The notes under the pieces: model-generated
What the model saw: only the letters and a program-made list of their open reading frames with translations
Told to the model about the DNA's origin: nothing
The model's database searches: none
IMG/VR virus record: IMGVR_UViG_3300005965_000002
Coordinates: 124,001-188,000 of that record
Reading direction: 5' to 3' (one strand)
Length of the DNA stretch: 64,000 nt
Translations under genes and position numbers: made by a program
Shown here: in pieces, positions 8,176-31,731 of the stretch
Layout of the letters: each line of letters opens with the position of its first letter
How positions within the stretch are numbered: position 1 is the stretch's first letter

Positions 8176-8444
8176 AAAAATCAGATATTCTACCATCTTT
8201 GGAGTACTATATGCCAAACCCAAAGGATTATGATAATAAGCAAGATTGGATGGATGCCTGTATGTCCCAACAAAAGGACGAAGGCAAAAATATGAAGAAA
8301 GAAGATGAGAGGGATCAGGCAGTAGCCATTTGTCTAAATATGTGGAGAGATAAGAATAAGAAGACTGCCAGTAAGGGCAAGGTAGCGAGCGCCGCCAAAG
8401 CTTTATATAAATTATCAAAGAAATTAGAAGATCTTGGAAAGTAA
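8172..8444 (+). CDS. Small phage head-associated protein
   Basis: PNPKDY...WMDACM...DQAVAICLNMW pattern typical of small phage head-region proteins; KTAS/KVAS sites. Confidence 0.55.
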   Translation: MKKSDILPSLEYYMPNPKDYDNKQDWMDACMSQQKDEGKNMKKEDERDQAVAICLNMWRDKNKKTASKGKVASAAKALYKLSKKLEDLGK

Positions 8445-8445
8445 A

Positions 8446-9669
8446 ATGAAATATCTCATATCCGATTCCCTGAGACGTATTGCATCCGCTTTAGAAGTTG
8501 ATCTAGATAATGTTAAGAATAGCAAAAAGCCGGTTGTTTTCTTAGGTGGAAATGCTTCTGATAATTCCTGGAGAGAAGATATAAAAAAGGAATTTTCCGA
8601 TAAGATTATGTTTTTGGATCCCTTTGATAAAGATTGGGAAGCAGAAGAAAACATATATAAGGAATTAGAAGCATTGATGAAATCGGACAACGTCGTTTTC
8701 TATAAGGGCGGAGAAGGATCTGAAAAAGAAAAAGAATTTCTTGATCAGGTCAAAAAAAGTAATTACGAAGATTTTGACGACTTGAGCGAGCTAAAGAATT
8801 ATCTAAAAAAGATAAGCGGTAAAATGGAAAAAACTGCTTATCCTATAGTAGGTCAACCCGCTTCTGACCTTAAGTTGGAGAAGCTCGATAAAGAATCCAT
8901 CGAGGCTTTAATAGAGGATTTAAAACAGGGTGTGGATATTAAGGTAGACCCAGAAGTAAAAAAGATTCCCAATATGTCCGATTTGCATGAGTTGAAAGCT
9001 GAAGACATAAAAAAAGAGATAGCTAAAGGTAATCCTTTTTTAAAAGTGTTGCTTGATAAGTATAAGAGTTTACCCGGGAGTAAAAACCCAGCGCTCAAAT
9101 ATGATAAAGAAAAACATATGTATATACCAACTGAATTGGGGCAAATGAGTAAATCAGCAAAGCAAGGAATGGTATATGACCGGAGTTCTACTCAATATGA
9201 TTTTCCTGAATTAATAGCTGATAAAGTTCTGCGCTGGTCTAAAAAGAATGTCCCGGATATTGCACTAGGAGAAGATGGCAGAGAAGATGAGATTCATGTT
9301 ACTATTCTTTATGGGTTGTTTACTACAAATCCTTCCGAAGTAGAAGATATTATAAAAAAGTATAACATAGAACCTTTTGAGATAAGACTATCCTTAATTA
9401 CTGCTTTTTTAAATGGTGACCAGGATGTTTTGAAGATAGATGTAGAATCCTCTGGACTCCACAACCTCCATAAGCTACTCCAAGAAAATATCAAGAATGA
9501 TAACAAATATCCGGAGTACCGACCCCACGTAACTATAGCCTACCTTAAAAAAGGCGAATCAGAAAATTACATAGGTAGAGATGATTTTCAGGGAATATCG
9601 TGCAAGGTGAATAATATTGTTTTTAGCTCCAGAACGGGCGATAAAATAGACATTCCTCTTATTGGTTGA
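8446..9669 (+). CDS. Nucleoside 2-deoxyribosyltransferase-like domain + Acb1/T4 gp57B-like 2H phosphodiesterase
   Basis: N-terminal VVFLGG...SWRE...FLDPF...DW...E; C-terminal two HxT motifs EIHVTILYG and YPEYRPHVTIAY; ATG at 8446 preferred over TTG at 8434. Confidence 0.75.
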   Translation: MKYLISDSLRRIASALEVDLDNVKNSKKPVVFLGGNASDNSWREDIKKEFSDKIMFLDPFDKDWEAEENIYKELEALMKSDNVVFYKGGEGSEKEKEFLDQVKKSNYEDFDDLSELKNYLKKISGKMEKTAYPIVGQPASDLKLEKLDKESIEALIEDLKQGVDIKVDPEVKKIPNMSDLHELKAEDIKKEIAKGNPFLKVLLDKYKSLPGSKNPALKYDKEKHMYIPTELGQMSKSAKQGMVYDRSSTQYDFPELIADKVLRWSKKNVPDIALGEDGREDEIHVTILYGLFTTNPSEVEDIIKKYNIEPFEIRLSLITAFLNGDQDVLKIDVESSGLHNLHKLLQENIKNDNKYPEYRPHVTIAYLKKGESENYIGRDDFQGISCKVNNIVFSSRTGDKIDIPLIG

Positions 9670-9746: not shown

Positions 9747-10853
9747 ATGGCAGAACGTAACTATGTCGCTCTCGTTGATTTCAATGTCAACATCGACAAC
9801 GGTAAGGAGACAGTAAAAATAACGGCTGGCTCTGAGTTTTCATACGACGGGTTGTATGTTACTTTTGGTGATTCCAGAGGAATGTGCAAACCTCTAGGTA
9901 AGATGGCTGGAGAATGGTTTTCAGTATCCAATAATCAGCCAGCACAGACTAAGCCTGCAGCGCCTAACCCCAATACCACTAAATCTAGAGTAGAGAATAG
10001 TGATGAAGTACCGAACGCTCCTGTAGTGAATGCGGGGAAAGATCGAGAACTAGAAGGCATGGTGGATAACTATGAAAAGGGTACTTACAAAAATCCTTCA
10101 GCAAAAGTTATCCACGATGATGAGGCTGTAGTCGGCCAGGTAAAGAATACCGACCAGAACGCAGTAAAAAATACGACAGGTGTTCAGATGAATGAGCAAC
10201 CGGATAGCGAAAAAAGGGTTGTTTATGAGGAAGAAAGGGTTGCTAAGGAAACCGTCCCCCAGAAGCCTGATGAGGGTGAAAAGCACCTGAAGGTAGAAGG
10301 CGAAGGAGATGGCGTTTTAGTTAAGGAAACCAGTCCTCTGTCTGAAGTAGAAAAGCTTAGGAAGCAGTTAGCAGAAGCTGAGGCTCGTCTTGCCGAATCA
10401 CAGAAACCCCAGGTTTCTGTCGAAGAGGATGCAGTTAAAAAGACTTCTGCTCTGAATAACCAATCTACTGATATTGGTTCTTCCACTCAGGCTCAAACTA
10501 TAGAAAAGCCAGCAACTCCAAAGGGGAAACTTTCCGGAAAAAAGACTGGAACTTTGAAGAGAGCGACAAACTCAGGTAGACCTGTAGTGATAGAAGAGCA
10601 AGAGGGTACTGTAGTTGGTAAGGTAAAAAATACCAACGTTAATCAGACAAAGGATGGTATTACCATCCGTACCCGTGTGAAGAATATGGATGATGTGGAG
10701 GAGGCGGCGGTTACCTATGGTAACTCTGTACCGGATGAACCCTCTGTAGAAATAACCGGGTCTGAACCATCAGCAGTTGACGCCTCTGATGTCGGTGTGC
10801 CTGTTCAAAAGGATGCTGATATCGACGTAGAGGATTTACTTAGCGAAATATAA
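9747..10853 (+). CDS. Hypothetical acidic, largely low-complexity protein
   Basis: 368-aa ORF with good RBS (aaggag); recurring acidic-V-V/K motifs (DDEAVVGQV, EEQEGTVVGKV). Confidence 0.65.
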   Translation: MAERNYVALVDFNVNIDNGKETVKITAGSEFSYDGLYVTFGDSRGMCKPLGKMAGEWFSVSNNQPAQTKPAAPNPNTTKSRVENSDEVPNAPVVNAGKDRELEGMVDNYEKGTYKNPSAKVIHDDEAVVGQVKNTDQNAVKNTTGVQMNEQPDSEKRVVYEEERVAKETVPQKPDEGEKHLKVEGEGDGVLVKETSPLSEVEKLRKQLAEAEARLAESQKPQVSVEEDAVKKTSALNNQSTDIGSSTQAQTIEKPATPKGKLSGKKTGTLKRATNSGRPVVIEEQEGTVVGKVKNTNVNQTKDGITIRTRVKNMDDVEEAAVTYGNSVPDEPSVEITGSEPSAVDASDVGVPVQKDADIDVEDLLSEI

Positions 10854-12905: not shown

Positions 12906-13367
12906 ATGCCTACCTATGAATACCGCTGCAGTGAATGTGGGACAATAAAGGAAATTGTCCACTCAATCAAGGAATCCCCAAAGTTTTTTTGTGAGTCATG
13001 CGATCCTGAAAATAAAAAAGACCCCTTAGAGCGTCTGATTTCCCAAAACATAGCCGGGGGCTTTTGCTTTAAAGGGATGGGTACGGAGAGCATGATTTGG
13101 AAAGAGAAGCGTATAAGGAATAAGAAAAACGCTGATCTTGAGATGCGCCAGTTGGAGCGTTGGGGAGGTTCCACCCCTAAGCTTACCCCAAATGTTGGTG
13201 GTGAGGTCTATGATAGCTGGGACGATGCCGGTAAAGCTGCGAAATCCAAGGGTTTAGATGACTCAAAGTATAAGCAGCAAGCTGAGGCCAGTAAGAGTAT
13301 CAGCAAAGTATCAGGTATTGATGACAGTAAGTGGAAGGCTGTGAAAGAGAAAAAGAATTCCGTATGA
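12906..13367 (+). CDS. FmdB-family zinc-ribbon protein
   Basis: MPTYEYRCSECG...FFCESC...LERLIS signature; RBS aaggag. Confidence 0.8.
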   Translation: MPTYEYRCSECGTIKEIVHSIKESPKFFCESCDPENKKDPLERLISQNIAGGFCFKGMGTESMIWKEKRIRNKKNADLEMRQLERWGGSTPKLTPNVGGEVYDSWDDAGKAAKSKGLDDSKYKQQAEASKSISKVSGIDDSKWKAVKEKKNSV

Positions 13368-13630
13368 CCCCAAATTATATAACCATGGTAGGATGGTTAG
13401 GATCTTTTTTCTTAATAGCTTGCGGAGTCCCTCAGCTTTTTAAAACCGTTAAAACAAAAAAAGTAGATGATATATCTATTCTTTTTTTGTTATCTTGGTT
13501 TTTTGGAGAAGTTTTTTCTCTTTTATTTGTGCTGATCCGAGCACCTGAAGTTCCCCTAATAGCAAACTATTCATGGAATCTTTTGATAACCGGGACGCTT
13601 TTGGTTTTTTATATCGTATATAGGAGATAA
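13364..13630 (+). CDS. PQ-loop / SemiSWEET-family three-TM protein
   Basis: GWLGS...GVPQLFKTVKTKKVDDIS motif with three hydrophobic helices; ATG at 13364 overlaps upstream TGA. Confidence 0.8.
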   Translation: MTPNYITMVGWLGSFFLIACGVPQLFKTVKTKKVDDISILFLLSWFFGEVFSLLFVLIRAPEVPLIANYSWNLLITGTLLVFYIVYRR

Positions 13631-13632
13631 AG

Positions 13633-16600
13633 ATGGAAAATGCCCTTAAAAAAGGATTAAGCTTAAGTCTTATTGTGGGCCCCGGTGAATCCTCTGAGCT
13701 GGAGAGATGTTTAAAGTCCTGTATTGGATCATTAAACGGGAAAAAGGATCTTTTTGATGAGATAAACATCACATTTGCTACAAAAAAAGAAGACGATAAA
13801 GTCTGGGAGGTAGCAAAAAAGTATGGTACTAAAGTTACGAGATTCGATTGGATAAATGATTTTTCTGCTGCAAGAAATTTCAACTTCAACCAATCAGAGA
13901 TGTCTCATATCTTCTGGGTAGATGCCGATGACGTTATAAAGCCCGAGCAGTACGATAAGTTACTGGAAAGAAAAGAACGTATCTATCAGTTAGATATGAT
14001 TTTAATTTCCTACGTATACGCGCACGACAACGAAGATAAACCTGTCATAGTTCTACCCCGCGAACGAATAGTCAGAAATTGCCCTCAGATAAGGTGGGAG
14101 GATCCGATACACGAGTACCTTCCCATGCTAGCAAACTTTAAAATGCAGGAATGGAAAGATTTAGCGCTTGACCACTATCGGATGAAACCATTTAATCCGG
14201 AGCGAAATGTTTCCATACTAGCGGAACAGTACAAGAAGCCTACCTGTACACCTCGGAATAAGTTTTACTATGGAAAAGAATTATTTGATATACAGCAGTA
14301 CGATAAAGCTCTTCCTATTCTTGAAGAATATGTAAACGAAGGAAAAGATTTCCGAGATAATCTAACGGTTGCTTGCATAAAACTAGCAACGTACTATTAC
14401 GTAAATAATGATAAGCCCTCTGCAAAGGATTTTGCTCTAAGGGGTATGCGGTTTAATAGTGAGTATGCAGAGAACTACGTAATAGTAGGAGATGTGTTAG
14501 CTGAATCAGGATTGTTTGATGAGGCTATCCAATATTATTCAGAAGCATCCGGCAAGAAGCTAACCGGGGGTATGTCTCAGCTAGTAGATTATTACGGGTT
14601 TATTCCGAATTATCGTTTAGCCGTGATGTACGCCAATAAGCGGGATTATAAGAAGTCCAAGGAATATGCCTTACAGGCATTGGAAATAAAACCTAATAAT
14701 CCTGAATTAAAAAATTTGGTAAACCAATTGGACACCAACATCTCTGAGAGCGAAAAAGAGAAGGTAATGGATGAGAACTTTGTAAATGAGTTGCAAAAGT
14801 TCTTGTCTGACCATAATTTTTCCTTAGCTGTTGAAGAAAACAATTCTTTCTTTGGAAGAATAAAACTTTCTGTAAAAAAGAATGTTTCTATAGCCTGGAT
14901 GTTGCCTGGTATAAATCCAGAAGATCCTGCCACCCGTATACGTCGGTTGAATATAAATAAATATTTTAACGATAACTCTGTCGGTGTCAAAACATGTATA
15001 GTAACCAATTATCTCACACTGTCTCCTTATGAGATAAGAAACAAGATAGGCGAGAGCACCGTAGCTGTTTTTACGACCTATACCTCGAAGGATAAGGAAG
15101 CAATAGATTATCTGAAAAATATAGGAGTACGAGTAATCTATGATATCGCTGAAGCCATCTTTGATATGCCGGGTGTTGCAGAATGCCTGAAATTAGCGGA
15201 TGGTATAGTATGCTGTTCCGAGAAGCTTGCAGAAATGTGTATGGAAAGAGGCCTGCGGAATGTAATGGTTATTAAGGATGCCATAGAAAAGTGGGCTCCA
15301 GTAAAAGAACACAAAGAAATAGAAAAACCAAAAGCTCTCTATATGGGTATGGGCGGTAACAGCTTTCTTGTTACAGAATTCTTAAAAGACACAATTACTG
15401 AAGCTGGTTATGATTTAGAAGTAATTACTGAATGGGATGACGCTACTAAGAAATGGTCATTGGAAACCTGGGCGGAAGATATGGTAGCGTGCGATGTTGT
15501 GTTATGCCCCCAAAGAGTTGACGTGCAGCCTGCGAAGTCGGACGTTAAGGCCTCAGTAGCAATGGCATTGGGAATGCCCGTTATAGCCAGCAGCCTGCCT
15601 TCTTATAGAACTATAATCAAAAATGGTGAAAACGGATACATATGCGAGACTAAGGACGATTGGAAAGAAGCTCTGATTAAATGCAAGGATTATAAACATA
15701 GAGCAGAAATCGGAAAGAAAGCTAGAGAATCTATAAAGGATCATAGCATAGAAAAAGTAACTGAGCAATGGAAGCAGGCTAGCCTGGAAACTCTTGAGAG
15801 TGAACAGACAAGCGTTCAGATCCAGCAGTCAACTCCAGATAAAAGAAGAGACATTGTAGACATAATCATTCCTAATTATCAGAATGTAGACTATTTGAAG
15901 ATGTGTCTCACATCGATAAGGATGAATACACTTTATCCTTATCATATCATCATTTCGGATGCAGGTAGCAATAAAGATACATGGGAGTACCTTAAGTCAT
16001 TAAAGGGAATTACGATCCTCGGCGAGGAGGGTGTTAGAAAAACATATTCCGAAACATGCAACACCGGGATAGAAGCGTCTTCTTCTAAGTTCTTTGTGAT
16101 TATTAATTCTGATATTATCGTGTCCAAGGGTTGGATTACAAATATGATGGACAAGATGACGTCAGTTGATCGATTAGCTGCCTGCGGAGTCCTATCTAAT
16201 TGTGATAGAGGGTGGCTGCACAATGTCCCTGGCAGAGATGACATACCGCAGTACCCTATGCGTTTAGAAAAAGCAGGAATAGATCTGGTTCCCGGCATGA
16301 AGAAAGATCAAATAGCTCCTCATATAGAAGAGCTGTACGCTTTTATGGATGCCTCTAACAAGAGATACAAAGGAAAATTTACCCCTCAGAAATGGGTAGC
16401 TGGTTACGCTACGGTATATGCACGCAGTGCTATTAATGAGGTCGGTCTCTTTGATCCTAGATATAAAAATGGGTGCGAAGATTCAGACCTTTGCTATCGT
16501 TTAGAGAAGTGTGGCTATGCCATGGGTCAGGCTATTGATGCTTTTGTTTTCCATTTCGGGGGCGTAAGCAGGGGTGCTTATCAAGATGAGGGGCGGGAGC

Positions 16601-17787
16601 ATTACGATAAGGAAGACAAGGAAAATCATGCAAAGATTAGAACTAAGTGGGCTAAACCCAGAGTGGCTATTTACACAGGACCAGCATGGGAGCCTTGGGA
16701 TAAGGAAAAAGTTGATGAGGGCATGGCCGGATCAGAAACTTGGGCAGTGTATTTAGCCGAAGCCTTTGTACGAAAAGGGTATGAGGTAAGAGTGTACAAT
16801 GATCTTACGGGAGATAAGAAAATACCCAAGGTAGAGCCTGTTTATTTAGATGGAGGTAGAGGAGTCGCCGGTGGAGTAATCTATAGGGATTACTCTGAGA
16901 TGATGGAAGATCTAAAGTACGACCATATAGATCATTTCATATGTTCACGCTCGGTTGCTCCTTTTTACGAAAATCTGCATTCAGGACGAAACTATGTAAT
17001 GATACATGATATCTGGTTGTCACAGGATCCTAATTATGATTTAATTTCCTGGAAAATACAGAGGTATGCCTATTTAAGTGAATGGCATAAAGCATTTCTC
17101 TTACAGCATCATAAAAACATGCCTGCAGAGAAAATGTTTTTAACAGCGAATGGAGTAGTGCAGGATTGGTACTCCGATGTAGATAGTTATGAAAAGAAAA
17201 ATATGGCTGTTTACAGCTCTTCCCCTGATAGGGGTTTATATCAGCTACTACAGATGGTACCTATGATTAGAGAAGAAGTAAAAGATTTTGAGCTGAATGT
17301 TTGCTATGGTTTTTATAACTGGGAAACCGCCGCAAAGTCTCGAAATGATATAGCATCTCTCCATTTGATAGAAAAAATTAAAGATCTGATGAATCAGCCT
17401 GGTGTAAATTACTTAGGAAGAGTCTCTAAAAAGGAGTTGGCTGAGTTACAGAAGCAAGCTAAAGTTTGGCTTTATCCGACCTGGTTTGCTGAAACCTTCT
17501 GTATAGGAAGCGTAGAGTGTGGCCTTAGCAAGTGTGCCCTGCTTACAACGGATCTAGCAGGATTACAGACGACAGCCAAAGATGCTGCGATAATGCTTAA
17601 CCCGAACGGATTGAGCAGAGACGGAGAGTACCCAGACACGTATATAAATGAATTCGTTAGCAAAGCTATTGATCTACTAAATAACGAGGAAGTTAGAAGA
17701 GAATGGGCTGATAAAGCTTATAATAAGATGCTAAATTATACATGGGATAAAATCGCAGACGGATGGGAACAACAATTTAAAGACTAA
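13633..17787 (+). CDS. Multidomain glycosyltransferase: GT2 + TPR + GT-B + GT2 + GT-B (GT4-like)
   Basis: DFSAARN and WVDADD (GT-A); TPR helices; KSDVKASVAMALGMPVIAS (GT-B); DIIIPNY, INSDI, GCEDSDLC (GT-A); GSETWAVYLA, SSSPDRGL, ETFCIGSVE (GT-B). Confidence 0.88.
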   Translation: MENALKKGLSLSLIVGPGESSELERCLKSCIGSLNGKKDLFDEINITFATKKEDDKVWEVAKKYGTKVTRFDWINDFSAARNFNFNQSEMSHIFWVDADDVIKPEQYDKLLERKERIYQLDMILISYVYAHDNEDKPVIVLPRERIVRNCPQIRWEDPIHEYLPMLANFKMQEWKDLALDHYRMKPFNPERNVSILAEQYKKPTCTPRNKFYYGKELFDIQQYDKALPILEEYVNEGKDFRDNLTVACIKLATYYYVNNDKPSAKDFALRGMRFNSEYAENYVIVGDVLAESGLFDEAIQYYSEASGKKLTGGMSQLVDYYGFIPNYRLAVMYANKRDYKKSKEYALQALEIKPNNPELKNLVNQLDTNISESEKEKVMDENFVNELQKFLSDHNFSLAVEENNSFFGRIKLSVKKNVSIAWMLPGINPEDPATRIRRLNINKYFNDNSVGVKTCIVTNYLTLSPYEIRNKIGESTVAVFTTYTSKDKEAIDYLKNIGVRVIYDIAEAIFDMPGVAECLKLADGIVCCSEKLAEMCMERGLRNVMVIKDAIEKWAPVKEHKEIEKPKALYMGMGGNSFLVTEFLKDTITEAGYDLEVITEWDDATKKWSLETWAEDMVACDVVLCPQRVDVQPAKSDVKASVAMALGMPVIASSLPSYRTIIKNGENGYICETKDDWKEALIKCKDYKHRAEIGKKARESIKDHSIEKVTEQWKQASLETLESEQTSVQIQQSTPDKRRDIVDIIIPNYQNVDYLKMCLTSIRMNTLYPYHIIISDAGSNKDTWEYLKSLKGITILGEEGVRKTYSETCNTGIEASSSKFFVIINSDIIVSKGWITNMMDKMTSVDRLAACGVLSNCDRGWLHNVPGRDDIPQYPMRLEKAGIDLVPGMKKDQIAPHIEELYAFMDASNKRYKGKFTPQKWVAGYATVYARSAINEVGLFDPRYKNGCEDSDLCYRLEKCGYAMGQAIDAFVFHFGGVSRGAYQDEGREHYDKEDKENHAKIRTKWAKPRVAIYTGPAWEPWDKEKVDEGMAGSETWAVYLAEAFVRKGYEVRVYNDLTGDKKIPKVEPVYLDGGRGVAGGVIYRDYSEMMEDLKYDHIDHFICSRSVAPFYENLHSGRNYVMIHDIWLSQDPNYDLISWKIQRYAYLSEWHKAFLLQHHKNMPAEKMFLTANGVVQDWYSDVDSYEKKNMAVYSSSPDRGLYQLLQMVPMIREEVKDFELNVCYGFYNWETAAKSRNDIASLHLIEKIKDLMNQPGVNYLGRVSKKELAELQKQAKVWLYPTWFAETFCIGSVECGLSKCALLTTDLAGLQTTAKDAAIMLNPNGLSRDGEYPDTYINEFVSKAIDLLNNEEVRREWADKAYNKMLNYTWDKIADGWEQQFKD

Positions 17788-21961: not shown

Positions 21962-22002
21962 AATCTTGTTATTGATATCTATGTTTCCCGGAGGTATTAA
22001 TC

Positions 22003-26643
<4,641 letters not shown>

Positions 26644-27772: not shown

Positions 27773-29305
27773 ATGTCAGTAGCTTTTTATCCGGGTCAAA
27801 CGCTAGAAAGCACAGACCTTAATATTATCATAAGAAACGACACAGGAACCCCTGTAGATCCGTTTTATATTCGTTACTCGCTTTTTGATAATACTACTGG
27901 TATTCCCGTCCTTATAGGAGCTCCAAATAGAGTGCCCGCGACCACCGGGGTTGGTAAGTACTATGCAAATGCTACTTTACCACTAGATTCCAATATAGGC
28001 GATTGGATGATCCATTGGGATTTTAGAGAAACCTCAGGCAGTCCGATGGTACAGGTAGTCCAAGAATTTAATGTAGTGGACCAGGAAGTACGAATAACTG
28101 TATCCGATAATAATAACATGAATGATATGATCCGTAGAGTCAGAGTGCTCTTGCGAGACAATAATCCCGACAGAAATTATCGCTTCAGACCACCAGCTTC
28201 AGAAAAGTTCCTACAATCTCAAGCACAGGTTTTTGGTTATATCTGGGAAGATGAAGAAATACTTGAATACATTTTAATGGCTATTGATGACTTTAATGCT
28301 GCCCCTCCTGTAACCGGGGTAACTATAGATAGTATCCCGCTGAGATGGCGTACAGCCGTTATTCTTAGGGCTTGTTCGTTTGCCTGTTTTGCTATTGCAA
28401 TGAACTGGATAGCTGATGAGTTTTCCGTAAAAGGGGACGAAAAGGTTAAGGTTAAGGACGAGGAAGGTAACGTTTATGAATTATCATTAGAAGAACTATT
28501 TGATGTAATATATGGTGATAAAATTTTGGAGATGGAGAAAGAAGTACGGGACGAATATAAGAAAGTTATGAAGGAACTAGATAGTGATCAATTAGTTATG
28601 AATAGAGAAAAAAACACATTTGTAAAAACCATAAAAAAAGTTTTCAGGAAGATAAAGGATATCCTTGTAAAGAAAAAAGCATACAATGTTGATAAGATAA
28701 AAGAATCTTTTTATAAAGGTAGGCTAGAAGTAAAAAGCTTATCGGAAGATAAGGGGAATGTTGATTGGGTACCTATAAAGGATATATATAGGCACAATTC
28801 CCTATATAAAAAGATGATAAAGGTAGTTACGGATAAAGGAGATGTAGTAGTAACCGACGACCACAGTTTGTTTTCTTGGGAGACAAAAAAGCCTATAGCA
28901 GCTAATAAGTTGAAGATAGGGTATCCAATAATAGCTAATGAAAATAATATTTTAGTAAAAGCTGTCATAAGAAGTATAGAAGATAATCCCGCCGAAAATT
29001 ATACATATGATTTATGCGTACCTGGAACCGAGAGCGCTTTTTTGTCCTCTGGTATTTTGGTTCATAATTCTTATACCATATCAGGCGTATCTCTGGATGT
29101 TGATAAAAGTGCAAAATATGAAGGTATGAAGAACAACTTTATCACTGAGTATGATAAGTTAAAAGAACAAGCCAAGAGATCTATTAAGATCATCCGTGGC
29201 CTTCGTCAACCGAGATACGGTGTGGGCATTTCCTCAGCACTCGGACCCTATAGTAGCCCGGGTGTCCAAGCCCGCCGCAACTTTATATCTGGCTTTAGAA
29301 ATTAA
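27773..29305 (+). CDS. Neck / head-tail connector protein interrupted by an intein
   Basis: IRRVRVLLRD...WEDEEI...AIDDFN connector-like core; exteins join as WIADEF|SYTISGVSLD. Confidence 0.7.
   Translation: MSVAFYPGQTLESTDLNIIIRNDTGTPVDPFYIRYSLFDNTTGIPVLIGAPNRVPATTGVGKYYANATLPLDSNIGDWMIHWDFRETSGSPMVQVVQEFNVVDQEVRITVSDNNNMNDMIRRVRVLLRDNNPDRNYRFRPPASEKFLQSQAQVFGYIWEDEEILEYILMAIDDFNAAPPVTGVTIDSIPLRWRTAVILRACSFACFAIAMNWIADEFSVKGDEKVKVKDEEGNVYELSLEELFDVIYGDKILEMEKEVRDEYKKVMKELDSDQLVMNREKNTFVKTIKKVFRKIKDILVKKKAYNVDKIKESFYKGRLEVKSLSEDKGNVDWVPIKDIYRHNSLYKKMIKVVTDKGDVVVTDDHSLFSWETKKPIAANKLKIGYPIIANENNILVKAVIRSIEDNPAENYTYDLCVPGTESAFLSSGILVHNSYTISGVSLDVDKSAKYEGMKNNFITEYDKLKEQAKRSIKIIRGLRQPRYGVGISSALGPYSSPGVQARRNFISGFRN
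28424..29068 (+). mobile_element. Mini-intein (215 aa, Ser1, no endonuclease)
   Basis: Starts SVKGDEKVKV; block B VVVTDDHSLF; block F YTYDLCVPGTE; ends ILVHN followed by Ser. Confidence 0.85.
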
Positions 29306-31731
29306 TTTTCTTTATTGATTATATTTATTTGTCTTTTTATCCATCTTTTATTTTCATTTAAATGCTCAGCCATTTCTTGATATGTCATAGTGCCCCTATT
29401 ATTCTTTATAAAGTATATTTTATATTTATTTTTTCGGCTTTTAGTACTACCTATAGGATTCTTCGGAGACAGAATTCCATCTTTTATCATAGATCTTACT
29501 CTGCCACTGACCCATCTTTTAGTTTCGTTTAAGTTTATAGCTATTTTTTCCTGGGTCAAGCTTTGGTAGTTATCTAAGATATATTGATCTTTTTCTTTTG
29601 TGATTCTAGAGTTGTTACTTATCCTTTTGCTTGTTCTTTTGTTTTTAGATATTTTTATCAAGTTACTATAAAAGTCGCTAAAATCATCAACGGGTACACT
29701 ATTTCTTTTAGGGTAAACTTTATCTTTATATGTTTTAAGCTTTTCCAAAATTTGTTTTTCTCTTTTGTTACAGCTTGTGAGAAGTGCGTATTTATGTTTT
29801 TTTGAGATAGGTATCTTTACTGATTTATTAATAATGGATTTTATATCTTTGTACCACTGATGTAATATTTCCTTAGGTATCTTTTTTATATTTTTATATC
29901 CGTTGTCTTTAAACCATTCACTTTTAGTTTCTATTCCTTTACTTTTGCACCAAGCTTTAAAAGCTGAAGTTCTTTTTAAGCTTTGTTCAGAGAAGGGTAA
30001 ACCATTTTTAATTTCTTTATTTTGGTATACATAACCGGTTCCGAAATCATCCCCAAGATACGAAAAGTTACAACTTTGATATATAGTACCTATTTCATTT
30101 GCCTTTGGATCTGCGTAGCAGACAAATAGCCTCTTAGGTGTGTTTTTAGTCATCCACTTACAGGAAAACATTATTAACCTACTCCCTAGGTTTTTCGGTG
30201 TCCATGAAGCAGTAGCTCCCCGTTGTATAAGGGCTTCAAAGTGTTTCGTATTCTCTCCTAATAACTTAGAATAAGAGTTTGGCTCATTAATTAGAACTAC
30301 GCCGCCCAAAAATCCTTTATATCGTGCGGTAAAAACCCATTTAGGATTGTTTCCTATTGTACCTAACCATTCATACTTTTCTATAAAGTGTTTAATTTCT
30401 TTTGTATATTTTTCTTGCTTTAGCACAAAGTCTTTTGCCTTTATCTTTGAATAGTCAAAGCTTATATTTTCTAAATCATTTTTTAATGTAGATACTTTTA
30501 TTTTGTATTGATGGCAAACAGATTTAGACGCTTTTTTGTTTAACTCATCGGTGATAAATTCTATAATATCTCCTTTTTTTTCATGGTCTACGACCAACCT
30601 GGAGTCAAATCTTACTAAATTATCTATAACGGAGTTTTGCCTTTCATCTCTAATAGATGTTTTTAAGATATTTTCCTTTCTAGGCCCTTTCTTAAAATCT
30701 TTAATCTTACCATGCCAGAAATATCCATCATATTGTACCCACACGTTAATAGATGGTAGATAGAAATCAATATTAGATTTTGAAATAGGGTGGTATACCT
30801 GGAACTCGGTATAGGGGTCTATCTTTTTAAGATACATAAGAAATTTTATTTCTTCATCGGAAGAGCTAAAGGTATTTTTTTCTTTTGATGTGTTTAATAC
30901 TTTTTTATAGATTTCCTCATTCTGCAGGGGGCTAGGTACTCCATATTTTTTAATGTTGGTTTCTTTTATTTTTTCTTTTGTAGGTTCATCCTGAAATATG
31001 TTGTCTACTCCATACTTTTTGTTTAATGTAGATTTTACCTTATTCCTTACTGCAGGGTCTTGGGAAGGATACTCTACTCCTCTTCTTTTAAGATTAGTTT
31101 CTCGGCTTTTTCTTTTCATAGATTCTAATTGAGTGGTGTACTGCACTCCGTATTTAGCTTGTACGGCTTTGGAGGTACCTAGGACATTGTCTTTTTTTAT
31201 AATATCCGGGTTTCTACTTAGACCCAATTGGTTAGCTTTATACCTAATAGATTTCCATGATCTACTAAATTTATTGATTAAAAATTCTTTAGTATTGTTG
31301 ACATATATTTCTTTCAAAAGATTTATTTCTTCCTCTTTCCAGAAATCTTCTCTTTCTGGTACTTTTTTACCACCTTCAATAGATTCTTTTTTTACTATTT
31401 CCGGATCTCTCCTTAAACCCATTGCATAAGCTTTCCCCCAAATTCCAGACCAGGGTCTATTTAATTTGTCTTGGATTTCTTTTTTAGTACCAATTGGGTA
31501 TATTGACTTAAGAGTCGATAACTCTTCCTCGGACCAGGAATCTTTTCTTTTCCCCCTAGTGGCTCGGTCTTTTCCAATCACAGTGGCGTCTCTTTTTAAT
31601 CCTAGCTTTTTTGAGCGTCGATAGATAGTAGCCCATTCTTTATCGAGTAGTTTAGTCAATTCCGATTTTCTTTTATTTTCAAAATTTTCTCTTAGGATCT
31701 TATCTTCTTCAGGAGTCCATCGTTTAGCCAT
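29302..31731 (-). CDS. Myb-like repeats + basic repeats + DUF559/Vsr-like nuclease + Mom-like GNAT domain + HTH fusion
   Basis: 3x W(T/S/K)xEE..L..LGL.R repeats; KKYGV repeats; IDFYLP...VQYDGYFWHG; FIEKYEWLG...KNLGSRLI...YADPKANEIGTIYQSCNFSYLG; two terminal HTHs; only credible minus-strand gene. Confidence 0.8.
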   Translation of the reverse strand: MAKRWTPEEDKILRENFENKRKSELTKLLDKEWATIYRRSKKLGLKRDATVIGKDRATRGKRKDSWSEEELSTLKSIYPIGTKKEIQDKLNRPWSGIWGKAYAMGLRRDPEIVKKESIEGGKKVPEREDFWKEEEINLLKEIYVNNTKEFLINKFSRSWKSIRYKANQLGLSRNPDIIKKDNVLGTSKAVQAKYGVQYTTQLESMKRKSRETNLKRRGVEYPSQDPAVRNKVKSTLNKKYGVDNIFQDEPTKEKIKETNIKKYGVPSPLQNEEIYKKVLNTSKEKNTFSSSDEEIKFLMYLKKIDPYTEFQVYHPISKSNIDFYLPSINVWVQYDGYFWHGKIKDFKKGPRKENILKTSIRDERQNSVIDNLVRFDSRLVVDHEKKGDIIEFITDELNKKASKSVCHQYKIKVSTLKNDLENISFDYSKIKAKDFVLKQEKYTKEIKHFIEKYEWLGTIGNNPKWVFTARYKGFLGGVVLINEPNSYSKLLGENTKHFEALIQRGATASWTPKNLGSRLIMFSCKWMTKNTPKRLFVCYADPKANEIGTIYQSCNFSYLGDDFGTGYVYQNKEIKNGLPFSEQSLKRTSAFKAWCKSKGIETKSEWFKDNGYKNIKKIPKEILHQWYKDIKSIINKSVKIPISKKHKYALLTSCNKREKQILEKLKTYKDKVYPKRNSVPVDDFSDFYSNLIKISKNKRTSKRISNNSRITKEKDQYILDNYQSLTQEKIAINLNETKRWVSGRVRSMIKDGILSPKNPIGSTKSRKNKYKIYFIKNNRGTMTYQEMAEHLNENKRWIKRQINIINKEN

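What the first reader, a model, noticed from the sequence alone, without database searches (positions are those of the whole stretch)
13364..17787. SemiSWEET/PQ-loop transporter coupled to a four-catalytic-domain glycosyltransferase
Seen: an 88-aa three-TM PQ-loop gene 2 nt upstream of a 1384-aa GT2-TPR-GTB-GT2-GTB protein. Known: SemiSWEETs are dimeric sugar uniporters, and GT2-TPR enzymes glycosylate proteins such as flagellins and spore collagens. Inference: a phage glycan assembly line able to build a multi-sugar chain, with its own transporter.
Basis: partly seen in the sequence, partly recalled or inferred. Interest (0 to 1): 0.68.

Follow-up and report, generated by a model that had tools for sequence, protein, structure and literature searches.

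The report
Huge-phage four-domain glycosyltransferase, unlinked PQ-loop gene
A giant phage from salt lakes encodes a large four-in-one sugar-adding enzyme that most likely decorates its collagen-like virion fibres, while the small membrane-transporter gene beside it is a lineage-specific add-on that is not a canonical sugar transporter and is not linked to this enzyme in other phages.

Summary
Both genes exist as described. The 88-aa ORF (13364-13630) has a SemiSWEET fold and ends 2 nt before a 1384-aa GT2-TPR-GTB-GT2-GTB protein (13633-17787). The window lies in a 258-kb record of a huge phage from hypersaline lakes and mats.

The proposed transporter-enzyme coupling does not hold. The GT is a conserved gene of a huge-phage clade, with more than 100 protein clusters at 40-77% identity. 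Only 2 of 22 GT loci carry the PQ-loop gene. Most others have a small RHH-like gene in that slot. None of 10 other phage PQ-loop loci examined shows a GT next to it, and five such phages lack the GT entirely.

The PQ-loop protein belongs to a separate clade with the signature W45-x-x-G-E49 and N68-Y69. It lacks the sugar-stacking Trp, the most conserved SemiSWEET residue, and scores 33.8 bits against NCBIfam's cut-off of 80.

The "assembly line" reading is plausible. Catalytic-type motifs are invariant in all four domains. The N-terminal GT2-TPR module resembles GmaR, SunS and SgtA, which glycosylate proteins or peptides. All ten GT-bearing phage records searched encode collagen-like proteins; those next to the GT have 30-50% Thr at the Y position, and in six records they lie within about 15 kb. 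Glycosylation of these fibres is inferred, not shown.

The parts
12906..13367 (+). Zn-ribbon protein (153 aa). It is the conserved upstream neighbour of the GT across the clade, and its stop overlaps the PQ-loop start (ATGA).
   Evidence: Pfam Zn_ribbon_8 at 1.7e-9. Homologues sit upstream of the GT in L005, L010, L011, L012, L016-L018, L023, L027 and L028.
13364..13630 (+). 88-aa three-helix PQ-loop protein with a SemiSWEET fold, from a phage-borne clade (G10-W11, P23-Q24, S38, W45-x-x-G48-E49, N68-Y69). Ser52 replaces the canonical pocket Trp.
13654..14337 (+). GT domain 1 of P0002 (about aa 8-235): GT2/GT-A with invariant D42 and D97-x-D99-D100. It resembles GmaR, SunS and ThuS.
   Evidence: Pfam GT2 at 35.3 bits, PDB hits, invariant residues, phrog_13126.
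14338..14757 (+). TPR region (about aa 236-375), the presumed protein-substrate docking module.
   Evidence: TPR_2 at 38.9 bits, plus TPR_8 and TPR_1, and consensus-TPR PDB hits.
14875..15807 (+). GT domain 2 (about aa 415-725): GT-B, GT4/CgeB-like. Invariant R435, R437, G572-x-G574-G575-N576, K635 and S636, but no canonical E-x7-E.
   Evidence: Glycos_transf_1 at 35.5 bits and Glyco_trans_1_2, PDB BshA and TarM, phrog_7162, invariants.
15850..16662 (+). GT domain 3 (about aa 740-1010): GT2/GT-A with invariant D776, N825-S826-D827 and E949-D950-x-D952.
   Evidence: Pfam GT2 at 66.4 bits, PDB chondroitin synthase K4CP at 3.8e-11 and GalT1, invariants.
16666..17787 (+). GT domain 4 (about aa 1012-1384): GT-B, GT4-like, with invariant G1033-S-E1035 and E1287 of an E-x7-E motif (E1287...E1295). 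Relatives carry an intein inside this motif.
   Evidence: Glycos_transf_1 at 32.1 bits and Glyco_transf_4, phrog_2170, NCBIfam PRK15484 and MshA, invariants, intein position.
22003..26643 (+). 1546-aa collagen-like protein and candidate substrate: an Ig-like N-domain (aa 1-105), about 406 G-x-y triplets with Y = Gln 45% and Thr 41%, and a C-terminal domain of a virion-structural PHROG family. It is the only collagen-like ORF in the 258-kb record.

Best explanation
These are two separate things that happen to sit next to each other. (1) P0002 is a soluble cytoplasmic enzyme with four glycosyltransferase domains, and it is a conserved gene of a clade of huge phages. Its N-terminal GT2-TPR module works like SgtA or GmaR: the TPR docks a protein substrate and the Mn/Mg-dependent GT-A domain puts the first sugar on a hydroxyl residue. 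The three further domains (GT-B, GT2, GT-B) extend it, giving up to a four-sugar O-glycan from host-made nucleotide sugars. The most likely substrates are the phage's collagen-like virion fibres, here the 1546-aa protein 4.2 kb downstream, whose G-x-T triplets offer about 165 Thr at the Y position. This parallels BclA and BclA3 on Bacillus and Clostridioides spores. The domain identities, conserved motifs, homologies and gene associations are shown. The substrate, the sugars and the order of action are inferred. (2) P0001 is a real, selected gene for a SemiSWEET-fold membrane protein that presumably works as a dimer. It belongs to a phage-borne PQ-loop clade with a different pocket: it has a conserved Trp45 and Glu49 and lacks the sugar-stacking Trp. 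It was inserted in this sub-lineage into a variable slot between the Zn-ribbon gene and the GT. It probably carries some small solute other than the canonical SemiSWEET sugars and acts independently of the GT.
For: GT: domain calls are over the Pfam cut-offs. Invariant catalytic-type residues occur in all four domains across 28 sequences at 42-77% identity. There is no hydrophobic segment (max KD19 1.36). Module 1 is nearest to GmaR, SunS and ThuS. Module 3 is nearest to K4CP and to GalT1 of Fap1 O-glycan extension. SgtA is GT-A plus TPR, is encoded next to bclA3, and adds O-GlcNAc to Thr of G-P-T repeats (PMC7157674). All 10 GT-bearing phage records searched have collagen-like genes, within about 15 kb of the GT in 6 of them; in G000, G007, G010 and G011 every collagen gene of the record lies there, while G008 and G009 also have smaller collagen genes 40-70 kb away. 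A crude Fisher combination gives p about 0.003. Y positions are 30-50% Thr in every GT-linked collagen ORF. The collagen protein's C-domain belongs to a virion-structural PHROG. An intein sits in the E-x7-E motif in relatives. No nucleotide-sugar enzymes were found in G000. PQ-loop: fold and homology, clade signature and missing Trp, below the NCBIfam and MtN3 cut-offs, present in 2 of 22 GT loci, other phage copies in unrelated contexts, no GT homologue in five PQ-loop phages, purifying selection.
Against: No experiment or proteomic data exist and no RNA runs hold the locus. In four GT-bearing records the collagen genes lie 57-60 kb or more from the GT. Two phages without the GT still have collagen-like genes, so the link is neither exclusive nor always positional. 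Related phages share synteny, so the proximity statistic overstates independence. GT-B domain 2 lacks the canonical E-x7-E by my by-eye alignment. The GT lies in a block of nucleic-acid enzymes, not among obvious structural genes. The tight translational coupling of the PQ-loop gene to the GT (2-nt gap, Shine-Dalgarno inside the PQ gene) is kept in both genomes that have it, so a lineage-specific functional link cannot be excluded. The dimer prediction gave no verdict.
Confidence: 0.5

Rival explanations
1. One reading: the PQ-loop protein is a sugar uniporter that supplies or exports sugar for the adjacent GT, and the two form one functional glycan-assembly unit.
For: The genes are 2 nt apart and translationally coupled, and this arrangement is conserved in the 77% relative L010. 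The protein has a SemiSWEET fold. Some bacterial SemiSWEET genes sit in carbohydrate operons (PMC5972207). The phage record has no nucleotide-sugar synthesis genes of its own.
Against: The PQ-loop gene is absent from 20 of 22 GT loci. No other phage PQ-loop locus examined shows a GT neighbour, and five such phages lack the GT. The sugar-stacking Trp is replaced by Ser52 and is never Trp in the clade. The protein is below the SemiSWEET family cut-offs. A cytoplasmic GT uses nucleotide sugars, not free imported sugar.
Confidence: 0.1
2. The GT hypermodifies phage DNA with a sugar chain as an anti-restriction measure, like the T-even glucosyltransferases or arabinosylating phages.
For: The neighbours are nucleic-acid enzymes: a 2H/Acb1-like phosphoesterase with a deoxyribosyltransferase-like domain and a 3'-5' exonuclease. 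A Mom-family DNA-modification protein lies at 29302-31731. Virus GTs are known to hypermodify DNA (cited in PMC12619734).
Against: Five GT-bearing genomes, two of them at least 91% complete, have no ThyA-family pyrimidine hydroxymethylase. TPR domains and the GmaR/SunS/SgtA likeness point to a protein substrate. No hit to the known DNA-GT families was seen in Pfam, PHROG or NCBIfam.
Confidence: 0.1
3. The GT remodels a host envelope glycan (O-antigen, teichoic acid or S-layer glycan) for superinfection exclusion. The PQ-loop protein would help handle a lipid-linked sugar, as the PQ-loop protein MPDU1 does in eukaryotes (recalled from memory, not tested).
For: Phage GTs near tail-fibre regions have been proposed to alter host surfaces (PMC7029224). 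GT2 and GT4 domains are typical of polysaccharide synthesis.
Against: The GT has no membrane segment. No flippase, polymerase or GtrA/B-type partners were seen in the locus. The gene is conserved across a whole huge-phage clade, unlike a variable moron. The PQ-loop gene is missing in most relatives.
Confidence: 0.1
4. The PQ-loop protein is a SWEET-fold half-transporter for a nucleoside or ribosyl compound that feeds phage nucleotide metabolism. The analogy is PnuC, a full-length SWEET-fold nicotinamide-riboside transporter (recalled from memory).
For: In three of ten other phage loci the gene lies in a block with RNR, dCMP deaminase, ThyX and thioredoxin, and in L002 the RNR stop overlaps its start. 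The pocket has a conserved Glu49 and Trp45 in place of the sugar Trp. A deoxyribosyltransferase-like gene lies 4 kb upstream in the window.
Against: This is context only. Seven other loci show no such context. Fused domains gave no informative clue. No supporting literature was retrieved.
Confidence: 0.15

Closest known systems
SgtA of Clostridioides difficile (protein O-GlcNAc transferase, GT-A plus TPR) acting on spore collagen-like BclA3
   Same: It has the same GT-A-then-TPR architecture as aa 1-375 of P0002. It is encoded beside a collagen-like gene and glycosylates Thr at the Y position of G-x-T triplets in a metal-dependent way (PMC7157674).
   Different: SgtA is 358 aa and only initiates; its extending enzymes were never found. 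P0002 fuses three more GT domains. The setting is a phage virion, not a spore.
GmaR (Listeria flagellin O-GlcNAc transferase) and SunS/ThuS (peptide S-glycosyltransferases)
   Same: These are the best solved-structure sequence matches to module 1: GmaR at 1.8e-9, SunS at 9e-8 and ThuS at 1.4e-3. All are GT2 enzymes that act on proteins or peptides.
   Different: Identity is low and they are single-GT enzymes. NCBIfam SunS scores only 20.4 bits against a cut-off of 350, so P0002 is not a family member.
Bacterial SemiSWEET sugar uniporters (LbSemiSWEET 4QNC, EcSemiSWEET 4X5M, BjSemiSWEET 9KAX)
   Same: Same length, three-helix fold (TM 0.8-0.9), PQ motif on TM1 and pocket Asn on TM3.
   Different: The pocket Trp, the most conserved SemiSWEET residue and one required for uptake, is Ser52 here. 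The clade instead conserves W45, G48, E49 and Y69. The protein scores below the NCBIfam and MtN3_slv cut-offs.
Mycobacteriophage virion glycosylation (Freeman et al. 2023, cited in PMC12619734)
   Same: Phage-encoded GTs O-glycosylate virion proteins in the host cytoplasm.
   Different: There, separate single-domain GTs act on C-terminal tails of the capsid and tail-tube subunits. Here one four-domain enzyme is involved and the presumed acceptor is a collagen-like repeat.

Membership tests
SemiSWEET sugar transporter (NCBIfam NF037968, Pfam MtN3_slv) | Three-TM triple-helix-bundle fold of about 85-100 aa | tested here: met
   The model has pLDDT 93.5 and helices at 5-31, 39-59 and 63-86. The top Foldseek hits are all SemiSWEETs at TM 0.84-0.91 and rmsd 1.0-1.8.
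SemiSWEET sugar transporter (NCBIfam NF037968, Pfam MtN3_slv) | PQ motif on TM1 | tested here: met
   P23-Q24 is present. In the 150 best relatives, Pro occurs in 148 and Gln in 131.
SemiSWEET sugar transporter (NCBIfam NF037968, Pfam MtN3_slv) | Sugar-stacking Trp on TM2 (Lb W48, Ec W50), the most conserved residue, required for uptake | tested here: not met
   Three independent alignments to solved SemiSWEETs place Ser52 there. In the clade the column is T/A/G/M/S/L/C and never W. The importance of the residue is taken from PMC5972207.
SemiSWEET sugar transporter (NCBIfam NF037968, Pfam MtN3_slv) | Pocket Asn on TM3 (Lb N64) | tested here: met
   N68 aligns to it, and Asn occurs in 135 of 150 relatives.
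SemiSWEET sugar transporter (NCBIfam NF037968, Pfam MtN3_slv) | Score above the curated family cut-off | tested here: not met
   NCBIfam SemiSWEET_2 scores 33.8 bits against 80. Pfam MtN3_slv scores 19.6 against 23.7.
SemiSWEET sugar transporter (NCBIfam NF037968, Pfam MtN3_slv) | Homodimer that forms the translocation path | tested here: inconclusive
   Complex prediction with two copies scored 0.27 against a mark of 0.42 and gave no verdict.
SemiSWEET sugar transporter (NCBIfam NF037968, Pfam MtN3_slv) | Transports mono- or disaccharides | not testable with these tools
   This needs an uptake assay.
PQ-loop superfamily (Pfam PF04193) | Score above the gathering threshold | tested here: met
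   47.5 bits against 22, E 1.5e-12.
GT2 / GT-A glycosyltransferase (both GT2 domains of P0002) | Pfam Glycos_transf_2 above cut-off, and a DxD-type metal and nucleotide-sugar motif that is conserved | tested here: met
   Domain 1 scores 35.3 bits and has invariant D97, D99 and D100. Domain 3 scores 66.4 bits and has invariant N825-S826-D827 and E949-D950-x-D952.
GT4-like GT-B glycosyltransferase (domain 4, aa 1012-1384) | Glycos_transf_1 above cut-off and an E-x7-E motif | tested here: met
   32.1 bits against 26.4. E1287-x7-E1295 is present, with E1287 invariant. The intein of relatives is inserted in this motif.
GT4-like GT-B glycosyltransferase (domain 2, aa 415-725) | Glycos_transf_1 above cut-off and an E-x7-E motif | tested here: inconclusive
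   35.5 bits against 26.4. By my by-eye alignment the two Glu positions are A634 and V642. The clade instead keeps K635, S636 and K639 invariant or nearly so. The domain also hits CgeB-like Glyco_trans_1_2.
SgtA/GmaR-type protein O-glycosyltransferase | GT-A domain followed by TPR repeats, with homology to characterised members | tested here: met
   The architecture is shown. GmaR matches at 1.8e-9 and SunS at 9e-8. The SgtA architecture is taken from PMC7157674.
SgtA/GmaR-type protein O-glycosyltransferase | Transfers sugar to Ser/Thr of a protein acceptor | not testable with these tools
   This needs an enzyme assay or glycoproteomics.
Prokaryotic collagen-like (BclA-type) glycoprotein, as candidate substrate | Long G-x-y repeat region rich in Thr at the Y position | tested here: met
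   406 triplets with Y = Thr in 41% and Gln in 45%. Pfam Collagen matches occur in relatives.

The most novel reading that the evidence does not exclude
A clade of huge phages (about 200-470 kb) makes glycosylated collagen-like 'hairs' on its virions with a single fused enzyme that both starts an O-glycan of up to four sugars on the Thr of G-x-T triplets and extends it. This would be convergent with the BclA nap of Bacillus and Clostridioides spores and with the glycosylated fibrils of giant viruses. It would also supply the glycan-extending activities that were never found for BclA3. Separately, phages carry their own clade of SemiSWEET-fold half-transporters with a Trp/Glu pocket for a non-sugar solute.
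Probability: 0.3. Interest if true: 0.7.

Novelty: new variant of a known kind. Interest (0 to 1): 0.5.

Why it matters
If the fused enzyme glycosylates collagen-like fibres, it is a compact, soluble, single-polypeptide system for writing a defined oligosaccharide onto a simple repeat (G-x-T). That would be useful for glyco-engineering and would explain how huge phages dress their virions. It would extend phage virion glycosylation, so far shown in mycobacteriophages, to environmental megaphages. The PQ-loop result is a caution: a SemiSWEET fold and a neighbouring GT do not make a sugar transporter. It also points to a sizeable, uncharacterised clade of SWEET-fold proteins with a different pocket, whose nearest members to this protein are phage-encoded and whose substrate is unknown.

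Tried and rejected
1. The P0001 homodimer prediction scored 0.27 against a mark of 0.42 and gave no verdict, so it is not used as evidence either way.
2. The word-based homologue search with P0001 found only P0001 itself.
3. The search for related loci with the broad alignment A3 failed because no stretch was conserved enough. With A2 it added only two loci.
4. tblastn of P0001 against GenBank phages gave one hit, the unannotated 642-kb LR756502.
5. I looked for informative domains fused to PQ-loop modules in the longer relatives and found none.
6. blastn of the locus against GenBank phages gave no meaningful match.
7. The fold search of the collagen protein's N-domain gave only weak Ig-like matches, with phage 80alpha and NF5 baseplate proteins on top at TM about 0.4-0.5. 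This is suggestive only.
8. A literature search for a link between PnuC, SWEET and deoxynucleosides returned nothing usable. No paper combines huge phages, glycosyltransferase and collagen.
9. No RNA runs hold the locus, so read laying was not used and co-transcription is untested.
10. The holin idea for P0001 was considered and set aside. Full-length homology and fold match to SemiSWEETs and the conserved polar pocket residues argue for a transporter-type protein, but lysis function was not tested.
Full report
**Observation**

The two ORFs are real and lie at the stated coordinates. ORF 13364-13630 (+) encodes 88 aa (P0001). ORF 13633-17787 (+) encodes 1384 aa (P0002). The small gene's ATG overlaps the stop of an upstream Zn-ribbon gene (ATGA). 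Its stop lies 2 nt before the GT's ATG, and the GT's AGGAGA ribosome-binding site is inside the small gene. The window is positions 124001-188000 of a 258,580-bp linear virus record that is about 55% complete, so this is a huge phage. The same DNA occurs in hypersaline-lake and microbial-mat metagenomes, and no RNA run holds it.

**The small protein**

P0001 matches Pfam PQ-loop at 47.5 bits against a cut-off of 22. It matches MtN3_slv over its full length but below cut-off, at 19.6 against 23.7 bits. It aligns end to end with solved SemiSWEETs: 9KAX at 7e-6, 4X5M at 7e-5 and 4QNC at 6e-4.

A model built on 36 relatives has pLDDT 93.5 and three helices. Its best structural matches are all SemiSWEETs, at TM 0.84-0.91 and rmsd 1.0-1.8 A, followed by the mitochondrial pyruvate carrier and cystinosin. 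The fold claim therefore holds.

The functional label does not hold as well. All three alignments put Ser52 where canonical SemiSWEETs have the pocket Trp (Lb W48, Ec W50). The pocket Asn (N68) and the PQ motif (P23-Q24) are kept. Jia et al. 2018 (PMC5972207) call this Trp the most highly conserved SemiSWEET residue and report that Trp-to-Ala or Asn-to-Ala markedly reduces uptake.

A profile search of 1.84 billion representatives found 3,107 relatives, 392 of them at E <= 1e-10. In the best 150 the clade signature is G10-W11, P23-Q24, S38, W45-x-x-G48-E49, Y55 and N68-Y69. Position 52 is T, A, G, M, S, L or C and never Trp. Residues W45, E49, S52 and V56 follow an i, i+4, i+7, i+11 spacing, so I infer that they line one face of TM2.

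NCBIfam's SemiSWEET model gives 33.8 bits against a cut-off of 80. P0001 is thus a SemiSWEET-fold PQ-loop protein from a distinct clade whose pocket differs from the sugar-binding one. Its substrate is unknown. Against its orthologue in L010 it shows 33 identical, 26 synonymous and 26 non-synonymous codons, which indicates purifying selection. A homodimer prediction gave no verdict.

**The large protein**

Per-domain Pfam calls all exceed their cut-offs:
- Glycos_transf_2 at aa 19-116, 35.3 bits
- TPR_2 at aa 327-356, 38.9 bits
- Glycos_transf_1 at aa 643-699, 35.5 bits
- Glycos_transf_2 at aa 744-869, 66.4 bits
- Glycos_transf_1 at aa 1186-1364, 32.1 bits, plus a weak Glyco_transf_4 hit at aa 1033-1175

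PHROG and NCBIfam hits agree. There is no hydrophobic segment, so the enzyme should be soluble.

P0002 belongs to a large family. The search returned more than 100 clusters at 40-77% identity, mostly 1300-1400 aa, many on contigs of 100-470 kb. In an alignment of 28 members the invariant residues fall at catalytic-type positions in every domain:
- GT2-1: D42 and D97-x-D99-D100
- GT-B1: R435, R437, G572-x-G574-G575-N576, K635 and S636
- GT2-2: D776, N825-S826-D827 and E949-D950-x-D952
- GT-B2: G1033-S-E1035 and E1287

GT-B2 has a full E-x7-E motif (E1287 to E1295). In GT-B1 my by-eye alignment finds no such Glu pair. Relatives of 1765-1803 aa carry an intein. In P0020 it sits after E-T-F and ends in HN|C, which is inside the E-x7-E motif. 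This is the kind of conserved active-site position inteins favour.

**Is the pair a unit?**

It is not, beyond this sub-lineage. The block of Acb1-like 2H phosphoesterase, a ~370-aa gene, a ~580-aa gene, a 95-aa gene, the Zn-ribbon gene and then the GT is conserved. The slot just before the GT varies.

A PQ-loop gene occupies it only in the window and in L010, whose GT is 77% identical. Two HMMs built from phage PQ-loop proteins found no other copy in any of the 22 distinct GT loci with flanks of up to 10 kb. In seven relatives the slot holds a conserved ~58-aa RHH-like protein beginning MERVNFHLTDGE. Four relatives have a different RHH-like protein there. One has an unrelated two-TM protein, and some have nothing.

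The reverse test agrees. Ten other phage PQ-loop loci were examined. Seven have Pfam-annotated neighbours:

| Locus | Neighbours of the PQ-loop gene |
|---|---|
| L002 | class II RNR |
| L003 | Hsp20 and a baseplate spike |
| L004 | HNH endonuclease and RNA ligase |
| L034 | small unannotated ORFs |
| L035, L037 | thioredoxin, dCMP deaminase, RNR and ThyX |
| L036 | GGDEF protein and RusA |

L040, L041 and L043 were inspected only as ORF lists, and none has a large GT-sized gene beside the PQ-loop gene. Five such phages have no P0002 homologue at all. These include complete 193-kb and 82-kb genomes and the 642-kb LR756502.

**What the GT probably does**

Module 1 is closest among solved structures to three enzymes that glycosylate proteins or peptides:
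- GmaR, the Listeria flagellin O-GlcNAc transferase, at 1.8e-9
- SunS, a peptide S-glycosyltransferase, at 9e-8
- ThuS, also a peptide S-glycosyltransferase, at 1.4e-3

Module 3 resembles chondroitin synthase K4CP (3.8e-11) and GalT1, which extends the Fap1 O-glycan. Module 2 resembles BshA and TarM.

C. difficile SgtA is a 358-aa protein with a GT-A domain followed by TPR. It is encoded immediately upstream of bclA3 and adds beta-O-GlcNAc to Thr in the G-P-T collagen repeats. Its extending enzymes were never identified (PMC7157674).

The window encodes a 1546-aa collagen-like protein at 22003-26643, 4.2 kb downstream of the GT. It is the only collagen-like ORF in the 258-kb record. It has 406 G-x-y triplets with Gln (45%) or Thr (41%) at the Y position. 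Its C-terminal domain matches phrog_35197 and the virion-structural phrog_10330.

All ten GT-bearing records searched have collagen-repeat genes. In six the main ones lie within about 15 kb of the GT. That includes every collagen gene of the 424-kb, 98%-complete G007, and of G000, G010 and G011. G008 and G009 also carry smaller collagen genes 40-70 kb away. In four records the collagen genes sit 57-60 kb or more from the GT. A crude Fisher combination gives p about 0.003, uncorrected for relatedness. All GT-linked collagen ORFs have 30-50% Thr at the Y position.

The Ig-like N-domain of the collagen protein (pLDDT above 95 for aa 1-105) has stand-alone homologues 6-8 kb downstream of the GT in almost every relative. 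Its structural matches are weak, with phage baseplate proteins on top.

Against exclusivity, two phages without the GT still have collagen-like genes.

Against DNA glycosylation, five GT-bearing genomes have no ThyA-family hydroxymethylase. G000 has no epimerase/dehydratase and no NDP-sugar pyrophosphorylase, so donors would come from the host.

**Verdict**

The "glycan assembly line" reading is plausible and gains a concrete candidate substrate. The "own transporter" reading is not supported.

I rate this a new variant of known kinds. It combines an SgtA/GmaR-type protein GT fused to three extender domains, conserved in huge phages, with a non-canonical clade of SemiSWEET-fold proteins whose nearest members are phage-encoded. 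No paper in the searchable library combines these elements. The substrate, the sugars and the transporter's solute are all inferred and need the experiments listed under the next steps.

Noticed in passing
Relatives of P0002 (P0020, P0025, P0034, P0036, P0038, P0040, P0044; loci L017, L023, L027-L029): GT variants of 1765-1803 aa carry an intein (Pfam Intein_splicing, LAGLIDADG_3 or Hint). In P0020 it is inserted after E-T-F and ends in HN|C, inside the E-x7-E motif of the last GT-B domain. An intein in a glycosyltransferase active site is unusual.
   Followed up: partly
Immediately upstream of the GT in L014, L017, L018, L023, L027, L028, L029 (locus positions about 9807-9998) and in L021, L022, L025, L026: The conserved upstream partner of the GT in most relatives is a ~58-aa protein (MERVNFHLTDGE...AEIIRRAIDDYI) that looks like a ribbon-helix-helix (CopG/Arc-type) protein. 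A second clade has a different RHH-like protein there. It is absent from the window, where the PQ-loop gene takes that place. The RHH assignment is by eye and was not tested.
   Followed up: partly
window 22003-22320 and 27773-28100; about 6-8 kb downstream of the GT in nearly all related loci: A ~105-aa Ig-like beta-sandwich domain (confident model, no Pfam or PHROG match) forms a conserved gene family near the GT, as stand-alone ~150-aa and ~300-aa proteins. Only in the window and in L012/L013 is it fused to collagen repeats. The 510-aa protein at 27773-29305 has it too, together with a sub-threshold intein-splicing hit.
   Followed up: partly
window 29302-31731 (-): An 809-aa protein on the opposite strand combines DUF7487 with a Mom-family domain (the phage Mu DNA-modification family). 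The phage may therefore modify its DNA by a route unrelated to the GT.
   Followed up: no
window 8434-9669 (+): A 411-aa fusion of a nucleoside 2-deoxyribosyltransferase-like domain with a 2H phosphoesterase / Acb1-like (anti-CBASS) domain. The Acb1-like gene is conserved in the syntenic block upstream of the GT in relatives.
   Followed up: no
L035, L037, L002 (other phage PQ-loop loci): In three of ten other phage loci the PQ-loop gene is embedded in a nucleotide-metabolism block with thioredoxin, dCMP deaminase, RNR and ThyX. In L002 the RNR stop overlaps its start. This hints at a non-sugar substrate.
   Followed up: partly
P0093 (1486 aa, 43% identical to P0002, on a 102,850-bp contig): This relative is labelled 'MAG: glycosyltransferase [Nitrosarchaeum sp.]' in NCBI. 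Given the rest of the family, the contig is probably a huge-phage contig binned into an archaeal MAG.
   Followed up: no
window 22000-26600: G+C rises to 0.50-0.54 with strong GC and AT skew against a background of about 0.38. The collagen G-x-y codon repeats explain this, so it is not a foreign island.
   Followed up: yes
G000:C1:8476-8802 (-), outside the window: The same phage record has a second, stand-alone GT2 gene (302-aa open frame, 55.7 bits), about 130 kb from the four-domain GT.
   Followed up: no
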